From contig JAWQFM010000015.1 in assembly GCA_033442325.1 (NCBI GenBank), positions 940,741 to 980,821 of the forward strand: a stretch of DNA of 40,081 nucleotides, written 5' to 3'. The DNA comes from Salpingoeca rosetta (taxonomy: Eukaryota; Protista; Choanoflagellata). Under the pieces are notes generated by a model. That model had not been told where the DNA came from. It worked only from the letters and a program-made list of their open reading frames with translations, and searched no databases. This document shows, in pieces, positions 25,301-32,331 of this stretch; within the stretch, counting starts at the first letter, position 1; each line of letters begins with the position of its first letter. The translations under genes were made by a program, and so were the position numbers.

Positions 25301-27059
25301 TCTGCACAAGCCAGAGTCTCGTCAGGTTGGGCGCGCCGGCACCAAACCAGGCCGCATCAAGGAAGGGGATGTTGTTCTGCGACAGCTCGAGAAAGTCGAG
25401 GTTGTTGAGGCCTGCGAATGTGTTGGCGGGGACGGTGTGGACGCGGCCGCGCTCCATGTTGACTGTCTCAAGCAAGCGGTTGTTGGAGAAGAGGGTGGCG
25501 GGGAGAGCGGTGACTTGCAGGAAACGCATGCGGATGGAACGCAGCTGCCGTAAAGGCGCCAAGAGTTGCGGGTGAAGCTCGGTGAGTGGTAGACCACCAA
25601 TGTTCAGCTGTTGCAGGCGTGAGAGGCCCACGAACATGTCATCGGGCAGCTGTTCCACGTCGTTGCCCTGAAGCGCAAGGAATGCAAGCGTGGTCAGGGC
25701 GCTGAATGACCTGGATGCGATTGTGGTGATGCTGTTGAAGGCGAGATCGAGGAAGCGGATGCTGGGGAGATGCCCAAACAGGCTGCTGTCCACGTGTGTA
25801 AGCTGGTTACTGTGAAACGAGAGAACCTCCAACGACTGCATGCCGGCGAAGGTGCCTTGGTGCACAATCTCAATGTGGCTGTGGTTGAGGAAAAGATGGG
25901 TCAGCTGAGCCGCGCGAGCCAAGGGCGGGTGGGTGTTGCCGTTTGGACCGCGTTGCGAGAGGTGGACGATCGTGCTGTTGGCGAAAGCGATGGTGGTCAC
26001 ATTGCTGAGTGGGTTGAAGATGCTGAGGTGCAGATGGTTGGTGACCACACCGCGAACGTTTATGGTGCTGACGCTCTCCCAGTTGGCGTTCTCCAATACC
26101 CAGGACAAGGTGCCCAAGGTGAAGTTGGCGCCGTGCACGGTGAAGGTGCGTGGTCGCACCGTGAGCGAGAGCTGCAAAAGTCCAGCAGCTGCGCTTGCCC
26201 GCGTGGCGTTTGTCATGTTCACAAACATGTTCACGTCGACGAGGAGCGAGAGGGGTGAGCCAGGAGGGAGGGTGTGGACTGGTCGTGGGCAAGTACCCTC
26301 GGTGATGAGGGTTGACAGCCGACAAGGCACCTCATCGATGACTATATCATCAGTACCAAGCGTGTTTTCACTGTCGCGTCTGGGCCTTGACACTCTTGGT
26401 AGGCCAGAGGACATAGGCGTCTCGCTCTTGTGCGCATGCGTGGATGCGAACGTGACACGGCTGCTGTCGTTAACACTATCAGATCGTGGTGTTGACGTTC
26501 GTGCTCGTTGGCGGGATCGCAAACCGCTGTCGCTGCCGTCGTTGCCGGAGTCGTTGGCTGACGAAGAGGCAAAGAGGTCGGGGCACGCGGCAGCAAGTAT
26601 GTCGTCGAGGGCAGGAAACCCCAAGCGCTTGAGGGTGGTGTCATCATCGAACGAGGGCGTGGGTATGCGTGTTGTGTGCTGTGTGTGGCCTTTTGAAGTC
26701 GTATTTGTCTCGCGGTGAGTCGTGACAAAGTCCATGTCAAGCGTGTTGTTCATTTGCCCACGCTCCTGCTCAGTCGGCTCTTGTGTCCTCGGCCGTGTTT
26801 CAAGTTCTTGCAGCGTGTGCAGCAGCTGATGCAGACGGGCCACCTCCGCCTGTGCCTGTCGGCAACGGCTGGCGAGGGTGTGACTGCTTGCGGTGGTGTT
26901 TCTTGTTTTGCTGTGGGAAGCACCATTGAGCGTGTGTTGTCTTTGGGCGCGAATTGATTCGACCTTGCCTGCAAGCAGCTCCCCGGAGCCGATCAAGGCG
27001 AGGACAAACAAGACGAAGATTAGGAGGACAAGTGGACATGCGTGGAGGTGCCTTCTCAT
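22312..27059 (-). CDS. LRR receptor-like Ser/Thr (TKL-type) kinase 1: signal peptide, prodomain, LRRs, Cys-rich stalk, TM, kinase. Exons 27059-23314, 23114-22669, 22412-22312
   Basis: Hydrophobic N-terminus (LVLLIFVLFVLALIG) and many LxxLxLxxNxL repeats. TM AAVLGTLAGVFAFQGLLFAVYW. Kinase motifs VAAGACGVV, VAVK, MHR|DLKSGN, DFG, GTPLYMAPE, DVFSFGVLMWE and RPSF. Confidence 0.93.
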
Positions 27060-27362
27060 GACGCCTCGTATCTATGAGTGAGGGTGAAAGGCGTGGAGGT
27101 TGTGCTTTCGTTGTCGCTGTCTTGTTGTGGGCAGTATGATGGGGGGGGGAGGAGGGCGCTCAAGAGCTGCTGGCTTGGTAGTGGTATGCAAGAGACGCGA
27201 TGTGCGGAGGCAGATGGGCGGATATGGAAGGTAGACAACAAGGAGAGGAGCAGCACAATGGCTCAAACAAAGGCTCCAAACAACAACTCCAAACGAAATT
27301 TGACGGTTGATATTGCAAATTGCAGAACACAACCAACAGCGAACAAACGTTGTGTCACGCTG

Positions 27363-30500: not shown

Positions 30501-32331
30501 GGTCAAGGATTGCCAGTCGCGGGTGGTCGTGAATGGAATGCAAAATGGTGGCGTCGAGCAGGTTGTGCTGTGCTTGCAGGCTTGCCAGCGCCGGTGCGGT
30601 TGGGAGCAGCTCAGCATCCACGTGTGTGATTTGGTTCTGGAACACGGTCAGCTGCTCCAACGCCAGGGCACCGTCGGCAAACCACGCACGGTCGACACGT
30701 CGCAGCGCGTTGCCCTCCAGTCGGACGATCGCCAGCCGCGTGAGCGACGCAAATATTCCGGGCGGAAGGCTGGAAAGTTTATTTCTGCTCAGGTTGATGT
30801 GTGTCAGTCGTGTATTGTGTTGAAAGGCAGACGCTGGGACATGGCCAATCTCGCACTTGTCCAGGAAGATGCGCTGCAAGTTGACGAGGGGCGCGAGGGC
30901 GAGCGGTGGAAGCGCGCCAATGGGGTTGCTCCAGAGTTGCAGGGCAACCAGGTTGGAAAGGCCATTTGCAAAGGCGCGTGCGGGAAAAAGTGTGAGGTCG
31001 TTCTCAACGAGGTTAAGGGTGCGCAGGAGCGTGAGCTGTGCAAACGCGTTGTCGTGGATGCTGCTGATGTGGTTCTGGCGAAGGAGCAGAATGCTGAGCT
31101 GCGTCATGCTGGCCAGGGTGGTGTTGGTGATGGTGGTGAGCTGGTTTGCGTAGAGGTCGAGGGTGACGACACGCTCCATGCCGGCAAATGCGTCGCTGCT
31201 GATGTGTCGAATGCTGAGAAAGTTGAGACGCAGCTCTCGCAGAAAGGCTGCACGAAGAAATGGCTGCTCGCTCGCGTTGCGACGCAGGGCCACGCGATTG
31301 ACGTGACCATGGGTGATCTGAAGCCCTTGCAGCACAGGCAGGGGGTTGAGTATGTTGAGGTGAAGGGCGGGCACCTCCATCCCGTTGATGATCAGCTCAG
31401 CAGCTCGGTCCCACGTTCCGCTGTCCAGCACCCACCGCAGGTCGTCCTCGAGCACCACGCCGGACAGGCGCAGGTTGCGCGGGCGCCACGTGGCTGTCTG
31501 AGCTTGAAGGTACTGTGAGGCGGCTGCAACGTCATCGGCGCCCTTGTTCTCTCGCGCGTCTGTCACCAGCGGGCCCTCCTCCAAGGAGGTGTCAAACACA
31601 ATCTCCAGGGTGGCTGTGGGCAACGTGGAAGGAGGATAGCTGCAGTTGCGCTTGAGGATGCTTGATAGTGTGCATGTTGGGTTCTCAGGATCAAATGGGT
31701 CTTCTCGCCGCACGCGCGATTGCATTGGGTGCGTATGGTTGCGCGCGTTTGAAGTGTGTGATGATGATGATGCTGATGATGATGATGATGATGATGATGA
31801 TGATGCTGCTGATGATGATGATGATGGTGGTGGTGGTGGTGGTAGGTCGGAGTCGGAGTGGCGATTAACGGCAACTGGGCGTCGTTTCCGATCAGGAGTG
31901 GGCTGGGGTGTTGGTGTCGTTGTGCTTGTTAGGAGAGCGGCTTCCTTGATGTGTCTGGCGCCTTGGTGTGCCACGCTGCAGAAGTGTGCGACGATGGTAA
32001 GGAGTGCTTGAGCCTCAGGTGTGTCATCCTGTGCCCTCACCAATGCAACTTTTGCTTGACCACACAGCTTGTTGTGTTCACGTGCGCTGATGCCCAAGCA
32101 TGCCAATGCGGCGTTAGGGCTGCAGGTGGTGTGCGGATTCGAAGGCGACAAAGGAGGAGAGCGTGCGCCAGTCTTCTTCTTGGCGAAGGTGTGCGTGTCC
32201 AAGTCGCCGTTGATTGCTGAAGCGTCCGTGACGGTCAGGGGAGCTGCCAGGACGAGAAGCCAGACTGATGACAGCAACAAGCACTTAAGGGGCATCGTGA
32301 GCCCGTGCCCACTGCTGCCACACACTCCCAT
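27548..32331 (-). CDS. LRR receptor-like Ser/Thr (TKL-type) kinase 2, tandem paralogue of kinase 1. Exons 32331 (or 32295)-28679, 28379-27955, 27654-27548
   Basis: Signal peptide MPLKCLLLSSVWLLVLAAPLTVTDA, LRR array and TM AAVLGTLAGLLAFQGILFAAY. Kinase motifs VAAGAFGVV, VHR|DLKSGN, DFG, GTPLYMAPE and RPSF. Both introns match those of kinase 1 in phase and approximate position. Confidence 0.93.

What the first reader, a model, noticed from the sequence alone, without database searches (positions are those of the whole stretch)
26290..32331. Both receptors have an unrelated prodomain ending in a furin-type RxRR site exactly where shared homology begins
Seen: after the signal peptide each protein has ~170-200 aa of Ser/Thr-rich sequence that I cannot align between paralogues. 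This ends in RVSRPRR|DSEN (RPRR at 26376-26387) or QSRVRR|EDPF (RVRR at 31705-31716). A shared Cys cap follows closely (CRLSTLITEGTCPRPVHTLP / CTLSSILKRNCSYPPSTLP). Extra polybasic sites lie upstream (RSRQRAR, RKRR). Established: R-x-[KR]-R is the furin/kexin consensus. Inference: the receptors are made as proproteins, and the variable N-terminal piece is shed as an autoinhibitor, chaperone or released ligand. I know of no description of this for such LRR kinases.
Basis: partly seen in the sequence, partly recalled or inferred. Interest (0 to 1): 0.78.

Follow-up and report, generated by a model that had tools for sequence, protein, structure and literature searches.

The report
Cleavable pro-piece on choanoflagellate receptor kinases
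Two neighbouring receptor-kinase genes of the choanoflagellate Salpingoeca rosetta, like most of their 50-plus relatives, carry a small N-terminal module and a floppy linker. The linker ends in a conserved furin-type cutting site just before the ligand-binding domain, so they are probably made as precursors and trimmed, though no cutting has been shown.

Summary
RPRR (26376-26387) and RVRR (31705-31716) lie 17 and 10 residues before the first Cys of the LRR cap, and pairwise homology starts there.

The site is far from chance. In 45 S. rosetta paralogues, 35 have R-x-[KR]-R within 25 residues of the cap Cys; composition shuffles give 0.64. Relatives in Barroeca, Microstomoeca and Hartaetosiga keep it too. 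All six Arg codons are used, AlphaFold2 puts the site in a disordered stretch, and the genome encodes a close furin orthologue. The pro-receptor reading is therefore well supported, but cleavage itself is untested.

Both contain a conserved two-helix, Cys-bearing module, clear in gene B and degenerate in gene A. Only the insert and the Ser/Thr-rich linker are unalignable. The extra upstream polybasic sites are not conserved.

The genes have no TIR domain, so they are not the 'Kinase TLRs' of Richter et al. 2018.

This scan had already found the same family feature on other DNA of this genome (s1-442057, s1-434457). I found no paper that describes it.

Verdict: a new variant of a known kind, namely convertase-processed receptors.

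The parts
23313..27059 (-). Gene A, first exon. It encodes the signal peptide, pro-region, RPRR, Cys cap, LRR ectodomain, TM (23922-23987) and kinase N-lobe up to H-R. It ends at a GT donor followed by a (TG)n intron.
   Evidence: The kinase continues as DLKSGN in ORF 22184-23365.
26799..26870 (-). Gene A pro-module helix 1 with its conserved Cys (aa 64-87).
   Evidence: AF2 helix at aa 59-88, pLDDT 78-88. The Cys column is at least 90% conserved. The profile match is weak: 3.8 bits, reached by 5 of 1000 shuffles.
26583..26624 (-). Gene A pro-module helix 2, ending in the invariant Cys (aa 146-159).
   Evidence: AF2 helix at aa 142-163, pLDDT about 86. Invariant Cys column C130 of alignment A3.
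26388..26582 (-). Gene A Ser/Thr-rich linker, predicted disordered. It includes the non-conserved RSRQRAR (26499-26519).
   Evidence: pLDDT below 50; composition.
26376..26387 (-). Gene A RPRR, the candidate proprotein-convertase site. The cut would leave DSENTLG... as the new N-terminus.
26289..26324 (-). Gene A LRR N-terminal Cys cap (C246...C257).
   Evidence: Both Cys columns are invariant. pLDDT is about 90 from here on.
28678..32331 (-). Gene B, first exon, with the same layout as A. TM at 29251-29313. It ends at H-R with a GT donor and a (TG)n intron.
   Evidence: The kinase continues in ORF 27548-28390.
31978..32070 (-). Gene B pro-module: helix 1 (aa 88-101, KLC...) and helix 2 (aa 106-118, ending ...HFC).
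   Evidence: Profile built without A or B: 8.7 + 10.6 bits, reached by 0 of 1000 shuffles. AF2 helices at aa 83-99 and 105-132, pLDDT 70-79.
31717..31935 (-). Gene B Ser/Pro-rich linker, predicted disordered. It includes the non-conserved RKRR-Pro (31879-31890).
   Evidence: pLDDT below 50; composition.
31705..31716 (-). Gene B RVRR, the candidate proprotein-convertase site. The cut would leave EDPFDPEN... as the new N-terminus.
31642..31674 (-). Gene B LRR N-terminal Cys cap (C220...C230).
   Evidence: Invariant columns C183 and C193 of alignment A1.

Best explanation
Genes A and B belong to a large Salpingoeca rosetta family, with at least 56 places in the genome, of single-pass LRR receptor Ser/Thr (TKL-type) kinases that are made as pro-receptors. 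The inferred sequence of events is as follows.

1. The signal peptide is removed.
2. The protein then starts with a small two-helix module stapled by conserved cysteines.
3. A disordered Ser/Thr/Gln-rich linker follows.
4. Next comes R-x-R-R, then a short acidic tail (typically N/E-D-D/E-P).
5. The Cys cap of the LRR solenoid comes next.

A furin/kexin-type proprotein convertase, which the genome encodes, would cut after the second Arg pair in the late secretory pathway. The mature receptor would then start 7-25 residues before the cap, or before a Thr-rich stalk in some paralogues.

Shown here: the layout, its conservation, the predicted disorder at the site, and the presence of the enzyme. 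Inferred: the cut itself and the fate of the module. My best guess for the module is a transient intramolecular chaperone or mask during transport, as for the sortilin propeptide or the TLR7 N-terminal fragment. That guess has little direct support.
For: - Site conservation in S. rosetta: R-x-[KR]-R precedes the cap in 44 of 47 usable paralogues. 35 of 45 have it within 25 aa of the cap Cys, against 0.64 expected from shuffles.
- P4, P2 and P1 Arg are at least 90% conserved in two tool alignments, while flanking columns are below 50%.
- All six Arg codons are used at each of the three positions, so conservation is at the protein level.
- P1' is N/E/A/D/S in 41 of 43 sites and never Pro.
- After the cap there are only 14 such motifs in about 35,000 ectodomain residues, and 7 of them are one conserved RIRR.
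- In paralogues with a Thr-rich spacer of 34-88 aa, the site stays at the end of the pro-region rather than next to the cap.
- Homologues in Barroeca monosierra, Microstomoeca roanoka, Hartaetosiga balthica and an environmental contig keep the module, linker, R-x-[KR]-R and cap.
- Two members whose signal peptide abuts the cap (P0044, P0035) have no site.
- AF2 puts both sites in stretches with pLDDT below 50, between a confident helical module and a cap/LRR with pLDDT above 90.
- The genome encodes a furin orthologue with Peptidase_S8, P-domain and a Cys-rich domain, scoring 2e-109 against human furin, plus a second S8+P convertase.
Against: - There is no experimental evidence of cleavage: no N-terminal or proteomic data.
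- The signal peptide was judged by hydrophobicity only.
- A few paralogues have only weaker sites or none: L004 has KHRR, L010 has RQRVAR, L046 has nothing convincing, and two Barroeca proteins have only LTRR.
- Paralogues share ancestry, so the counts are not independent events.
- Cys counts in the pro-region are often odd. A disulfide from the module to the receptor cannot be excluded, and that would give a two-chain receptor rather than a shed piece.
- A and its 92%-identical paralogue L002 have different pro-regions. This argues against a module tailored to its own LRR surface.
Confidence: 0.72

Rival explanations
1. The site is cut, but the module stays on the receptor, either non-covalently or through a disulfide. 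The result is a two-chain receptor, as in insulin receptor, MET or Notch S1, rather than a shed propeptide.
For: - The module's Cys residues and amphipathic helices are conserved across genera, which suggests a lasting function.
- Cys counts in the pro-region are odd in 8 of 25 complete proteins.
- The helices reach pLDDT 70-88 inside otherwise disordered sequence.
Against: - The two best conserved Cys lie one in each helix and most simply pair with each other, and the two cap Cys are invariant as a pair.
- The Cys counting depends on a rough signal-peptide boundary.
- The pro-region has been swapped between near-identical ectodomains.
- The tools gave no coordinates or PAE, so docking was not assessed.
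Confidence: 0.15
2. The R-x-R-R motif is not a cleavage site. It is a conserved basic patch with another role, such as binding sulfated glycans or matrix, a sorting signal, or part of the cap fold.
For: No cleavage has been shown. Basic clusters can bind polyanions.
Against: - The pattern is exactly the convertase pattern: strict Arg at P4, P2 and P1, free P3, and small or acidic P1'.
- The motif is immediately followed by acidic residues, which would weaken polyanion binding.
- Its distance to the cap varies from 7 to 88 residues and it lies in predicted disorder, so it is not part of the cap fold.
Confidence: 0.08
3. The conservation is only shared ancestry among recent duplicates, and the match to the furin consensus is chance.
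For: The family expanded by duplication. Gene conversion is active: the cytoplasmic parts of A and B are nearly identical.
Against: - Paralogues are only 20-38% identical in this region, with flanks not conserved.
- Six different Arg codons are used at each position.
- The site persists in other genera at about 30% identity.
- Shuffles give 0.64 against 35 observed.
Confidence: 0.03

Closest known systems
Sortilin / Vps10p-domain receptors (furin-removed N-terminal propeptide)
   Same: A type I receptor is made as a precursor. A short N-terminal propeptide directly after the signal peptide ends in an R-x-x-R-type site that furin cuts in the late Golgi (PMC6331531, found). From my own knowledge: the propeptide masks ligand binding during transport and is released as a bioactive peptide.
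   Different: The receptor fold is unrelated: a Vps10 beta-propeller with no kinase, against an LRR solenoid plus TKL kinase. No sequence similarity of the propeptides was found. Here the feature spans a family of more than 50 genes, and its function is untested.
Human TLR7 processing by furin-like convertases
   Same: An LRR ectodomain receptor is cut by furin-like proprotein convertases, and the N-terminal fragment acts as a chaperone (PMC4432728, found).
   Different: TLR7 is cut inside the LRR solenoid (Z-loop) and both halves are LRR. Here the cut would lie before the N-cap and remove a non-LRR helical module. TLR7 signals through TIR; these genes signal through a kinase.
Choanoflagellate 'Kinase TLRs' (Richter et al. 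2018, PMC6040629)
   Same: Choanoflagellate-specific receptors with a signal peptide, LRRs, one TM and an intracellular kinase.
   Different: Kinase TLRs are defined by a TIR domain after the kinase. Genes A and B and the annotated full-length family members end with the kinase and show no TIR. The paper's passages on these receptors mention no propeptide or convertase site.
Plant and oomycete LRR receptor-like kinases
   Same: The overall layout is the same: signal peptide, N-cap with paired Cys, LRRs, TM and a Ser/Thr-type kinase (PMC10463195).
   Different: The origin is independent. To my knowledge, plant LRR-RLKs have no conserved N-terminal propeptide or dibasic convertase site. Plants process the peptide ligands, not the receptor N-terminus.
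Insulin receptor / MET / Notch S1 (convertase-cut two-chain receptors)
   Same: A receptor ectodomain is cut at R-x-[KR]-R by furin in the secretory pathway (my own knowledge).
   Different: Those cuts split the ectodomain into two functional chains that stay together. Here the N-terminal product is a module of about 100-200 residues plus a linker.

Membership tests
Proprotein-convertase (furin/kexin) substrate | Enters the secretory pathway (N-terminal signal peptide) | tested here: met
   There are hydrophobic N-terminal cores in A (aa 8-24) and B (aa 17-29) and one downstream TM. This was judged by hydropathy only, with no dedicated predictor.
Proprotein-convertase (furin/kexin) substrate | R-x-[KR]-R consensus with a permissive P1' | tested here: met
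   RPRR|D and RVRR|E. Across the family, P1' is N/E/A/D/S in 41 of 43 sites.
Proprotein-convertase (furin/kexin) substrate | Site accessible (exposed or disordered) | tested here: met
   AF2 pLDDT is below 50 around both sites, between ordered parts. This is a prediction only.
Proprotein-convertase (furin/kexin) substrate | A matching convertase is encoded in the same organism | tested here: met
   L051 has Peptidase_S8, P_proprotein and GF_recep_IV, and scores 2e-109 against human furin. L052 has S8 plus a P-domain.
Proprotein-convertase (furin/kexin) substrate | Actual cleavage at the site | not testable with these tools
   This needs N-terminomics, tagged constructs or in vitro digestion.
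Kinase TLR (Richter et al. 2018) | LRR, TM, Pkinase, then a TIR domain | tested here: not met
   There is no TIR in ORFs of at least 45 aa downstream of A. No TIR_2 hit of the genome scan falls in the window. Full-length annotated members P0010, P0011, P0016, P0031 and P0053 end with the kinase. Only about 490 nt separate B's last kinase ORF from A's start codon.
S. rosetta LRR 'TKL protein kinase' receptor family | Shared membrane-proximal ectodomain, TM, juxtamembrane motif and kinase | tested here: met
   A and B align over the whole length. Profile A2, built from 44 paralogues, retrieves proteins that NCBI names 'TKL protein kinase [Salpingoeca rosetta]'. The catalytic loop reads HR|DLKSGN.
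S. rosetta LRR 'TKL protein kinase' receptor family | Two-helix Cys module before the site | tested here: met
   B scores 19.3 bits summed, reached by 0 of 1000 shuffles. A scores 2.6 bits, reached by 6 of 1000. Both helices of A are predicted with pLDDT about 85, and their Cys fall in the conserved columns.
Plant RLK/Pelle LRR-RLK | Kinase domain of the RLK/Pelle clade | not tested
   No kinase phylogeny was made. NCBI labels the family TKL.

The most novel reading that the evidence does not exclude
Receptor and signal are encoded in one polypeptide. In this reading, the convertase cut releases a paralogue-specific, disulfide-stapled two-helix peptide. The peptide either acts as a diffusible cue between choanoflagellate cells, or acts as a tethered mask whose removal arms the receptor. 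This would be a protease-gated LRR-kinase signalling system in the closest relatives of animals, with pro-regions shuffled as cassettes between receptors.
Probability: 0.12. Interest if true: 0.85.

Novelty: new variant of a known kind. Interest (0 to 1): 0.58.

Why it matters
[quoted passage not shown] Suppose a family of more than 50 LRR receptor kinases, conserved across several genera, is matured by a furin-type convertase. Then convertase-dependent receptor maturation, a hallmark of animal signalling (insulin receptor, MET, Notch, sortilin, TLR7), was already applied to a large receptor repertoire before animals arose. This gives a concrete, testable handle in a species where transfection and genome editing exist: mutate the site or inhibit the convertase. 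It also defines an unnamed conserved module that no Pfam model covers.

Tried and rejected
- The word-based protein search on B residues 38-520 returned only generic animal and bacterial LRR proteins and no family member, because LRR words swamped the 8000-candidate limit. It says nothing about relatives. I replaced it with the profile search of the membrane-proximal region.
- A first profile test of the module was dominated by the largest subfamily and gave only marginal scores for A and B. I repeated it with the nearer subgroup.
- A Foldseek search of the B model found only generic LRR solenoids such as TLR13, LRRTM2 and LGR4/5, and nothing for the module.
- The ESM Atlas search of the B pro-region gave no usable hit.
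- Cys parity, used as a test of a self-contained module, was inconclusive.
- Membership in Kinase TLRs was rejected because there is no TIR.
The paralogue set is therefore 50 of at least 56 places.
Exon ORFs were searched separately by reference.
- The tools give no model coordinates or PAE, so contact between the module and the LRR was not assessed.
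Full report
**What is in the window.** Two long open frames lie on the minus strand, 23124-27059 (gene A) and 28531-32508 (gene B, ATG at 32331).
- Each frame encodes a hydrophobic signal peptide, about 170-200 residues of Ser/Thr-rich sequence, a two-Cys cap, LRRs (Pfam LRR_8, E 1e-42 to 1e-47), one TM segment and the N-lobe of a protein kinase.
- Both frames stop being coding at H-R of the catalytic loop. There a GT donor opens a (TG)n intron, which reads through as CVCVCV.
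- The kinase resumes as DLKSGN...DFG...APE in ORFs 22184-23365 and 27548-28390. This is a Ser/Thr (TKL-type) kinase.
- I searched exon ORFs separately and did not join them into a spliced model.

**Organism and family.**
- The window is contig C15:940741-980821 of a 55.4 Mb assembly. The ectodomain of A finds at least 56 places in that genome.
- Family members retrieved from the public protein library are named 'TKL protein kinase [Salpingoeca rosetta]', strain ATCC 50818.
- Full-length annotated members end with the kinase.
- No TIR_2 hit of the genome scan lies in the window, and no TIR appears in ORFs downstream of A.
- The genes are therefore not the LRR-TM-kinase-TIR 'Kinase TLRs' of Richter et al. 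2018 (PMC6040629).

**Checking the observation.** The coordinates are exact.
- RPRR is at aa 225-228 (26376-26387) and RVRR at aa 206-209 (31705-31716).
- The BLASTP alignment of A and B starts at PRVSRPRR / PMQSRVRR. It runs 42% identical through the ectodomain and becomes nearly 100% identical from the juxtamembrane region on. Nothing upstream aligns.
- The caps follow 17 and 10 residues after the sites.

I anchored each on a profile of the cap.
- R-x-[KR]-R lies upstream of the cap Cys in 44 of 47 usable paralogues.
- It is usually 7-23 residues away.
- In L011, L018, L023, L034, L043, L045 and L050 it is 34-88 residues away; in most of these a Thr-rich, mucin-like spacer lies between the site and the cap. 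The site thus marks the end of the pro-region rather than being part of the cap.
- Exceptions are L004 (KHRR), L010 (RQRVAR) and L046.
- 35 of 45 paralogues have a site within 25 residues of the cap. Residue shuffles of the same N-regions give a mean of 0.64 and a maximum of 5 in 2000.
- After the cap there are only 14 such motifs in about 35,000 ectodomain residues.
- In two MAFFT alignments made by the tool, the Arg at P4, P2 and P1 are each at least 90% conserved while no neighbouring column reaches 50%.
- All six Arg codons occur at each of the three positions.
- P3 is mostly Val, P1' is N/E/A/D/S, P2' is mostly Asp and P4' is often Pro.

**Beyond S. rosetta.** A profile of the family-specific membrane-proximal ectodomain, TM and juxtamembrane region (A2) found 151 representatives at E ≤ 1e-10 among 1.84 billion proteins.
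- Some come from Barroeca monosierra, Microstomoeca roanoka, Hartaetosiga balthica and an environmental contig.
- Their N-termini repeat the layout: signal peptide, Cys-bearing helices (absent or truncated in two), linker, then RIKR, RVRR, RVRR, RQRR, RSKR, REKR, RQRR, RMRR or RNKR, then the cap. Two Barroeca proteins have only LTRR.
- Two members whose signal peptide abuts the cap (P0044, P0035) have no site.

**The pro-region is not 'unrelated'.**
- An E-INS-i alignment of the N-regions brings two Cys columns into register. Helix 1 reads (L)C-x-x-(A/V)-x-x-(A/T)-L. Helix 2 reads (D-L-S)-x-(I/L)-x-R-(M/A)-x-x-(A/F)-F-(G)-C.
- With profiles built without A, B or A's close copies, B scores 8.7 + 10.6 bits (reached by 0 of 1000 shuffles). 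A scores only 3.8 - 1.2 bits (reached by 6 of 1000). A's sister L002 scores 15.9 bits (0 of 1000).
- AlphaFold2 with 45 paralogues predicts helices in B at aa 83-99 and 105-132 (pLDDT 70-79).
- In A it predicts helices at aa 59-88 and 142-163 (pLDDT about 85), separated by a disordered insert.
- In both genes the linker and the RxRR have pLDDT below 50, and the cap and LRRs are above 90.
- No Pfam family covers the module. The ESM Atlas gave nothing.

**The enzyme.** The genome has at least three P_proprotein hits above the Pfam cut-off.
- L051 carries Peptidase_S8, a P-domain and a growth-factor-receptor Cys-rich domain. Its catalytic domain matches human furin at 2e-109 and yeast kexin at 3e-80.
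- L052 carries S8 plus a P-domain.

**Interpretation.** The best reading is a family-wide pro-receptor design in which the module and linker are cut off after R-x-R-R by a furin-type convertase in the secretory pathway.
- Shown: layout, conservation, predicted accessibility and presence of the enzyme.
- Inferred: the cut and what the module does.
- Analogies are the sortilin propeptide (PMC6331531) and the furin-like processing of TLR7, whose N-terminal fragment acts as a chaperone (PMC4432728).
- One observation bears on function. A and L002 are 92.5% identical at the nucleotide level from the codon of D in DEVPC, four codons before the cap Cys, and have no detectable similarity upstream. Pro-regions are thus exchanged as cassettes between receptors, which argues against a module tuned to its own LRR surface.
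- Cys parity could not decide whether the module is self-contained, so a two-chain receptor remains a live rival.
- The upstream RSRQRAR and RKRR-Pro are not conserved and are probably incidental.

**Novelty.**
- Full-text searches combining choanoflagellate or S. rosetta with LRR, kinase, TKL, furin, proprotein convertase and Kinase TLR found no description of this propeptide or site.
- This scan had already reported the same family feature on other pieces of the genome (s1-442057, s1-434457). I reached the same conclusions with my own tests and added three things: the cross-genus evidence, the shuffle and codon controls, and the cassette boundary.
- Convertase-processed receptors are well known, so I class this as a new variant of a known kind.

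Noticed in passing
window 26324-26336 (codons DEVPC of gene A) versus L002:1519: Gene A and its paralogue at C15:1.21 Mb are 92.5% identical in DNA from the DEVPC codons, four codons before the cap Cys, to the end of the exon. Upstream they share nothing. The whole pro-region plus convertase site has been swapped as a cassette. L003 shares A's module but has a different signal peptide and first 60 residues or so.
   Followed up: partly
window 23313-23990 and 28678-29320: The juxtamembrane region and kinase N-lobe of A and B are almost 100% identical in protein, while their ectodomains are 42% identical. This looks like gene conversion of the cytoplasmic part. It was also noted by the scan as s1-435389.
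   Followed up: no
window 23124-23312, 28531-28677, 22300-22650: Introns made largely of (TG)n/(CA)n repeats split the kinase domain, the first exactly at HR|D. They stay open in frame and read as long CVCVCV runs, which inflates the ORF lengths.
   Followed up: partly
L011, L018, L023, L034, L043, L050 (paralogue loci): A subset of paralogues has a 30-50-residue Thr-rich, mucin-like spacer between the convertase site and the LRR cap. Their mature N-terminus would be a probably O-glycosylated stalk.
   Followed up: no
L051 = G000:C1:1687127-1690333: This is a furin orthologue with an S8 catalytic domain (2e-109 to human furin), a P-domain and a growth-factor-receptor-type Cys-rich domain, split over at least two exons.
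   Followed up: partly
window 19877-21562 (+): A 561-aa open frame next to gene A has only a weak, sub-threshold PH-domain match. The scan has a separate note on it (s1-435452).
   Followed up: no
window 2001-6000: This stretch has a clearly lower G+C (0.43-0.44) than the rest of the window (0.50-0.61).
   Followed up: no
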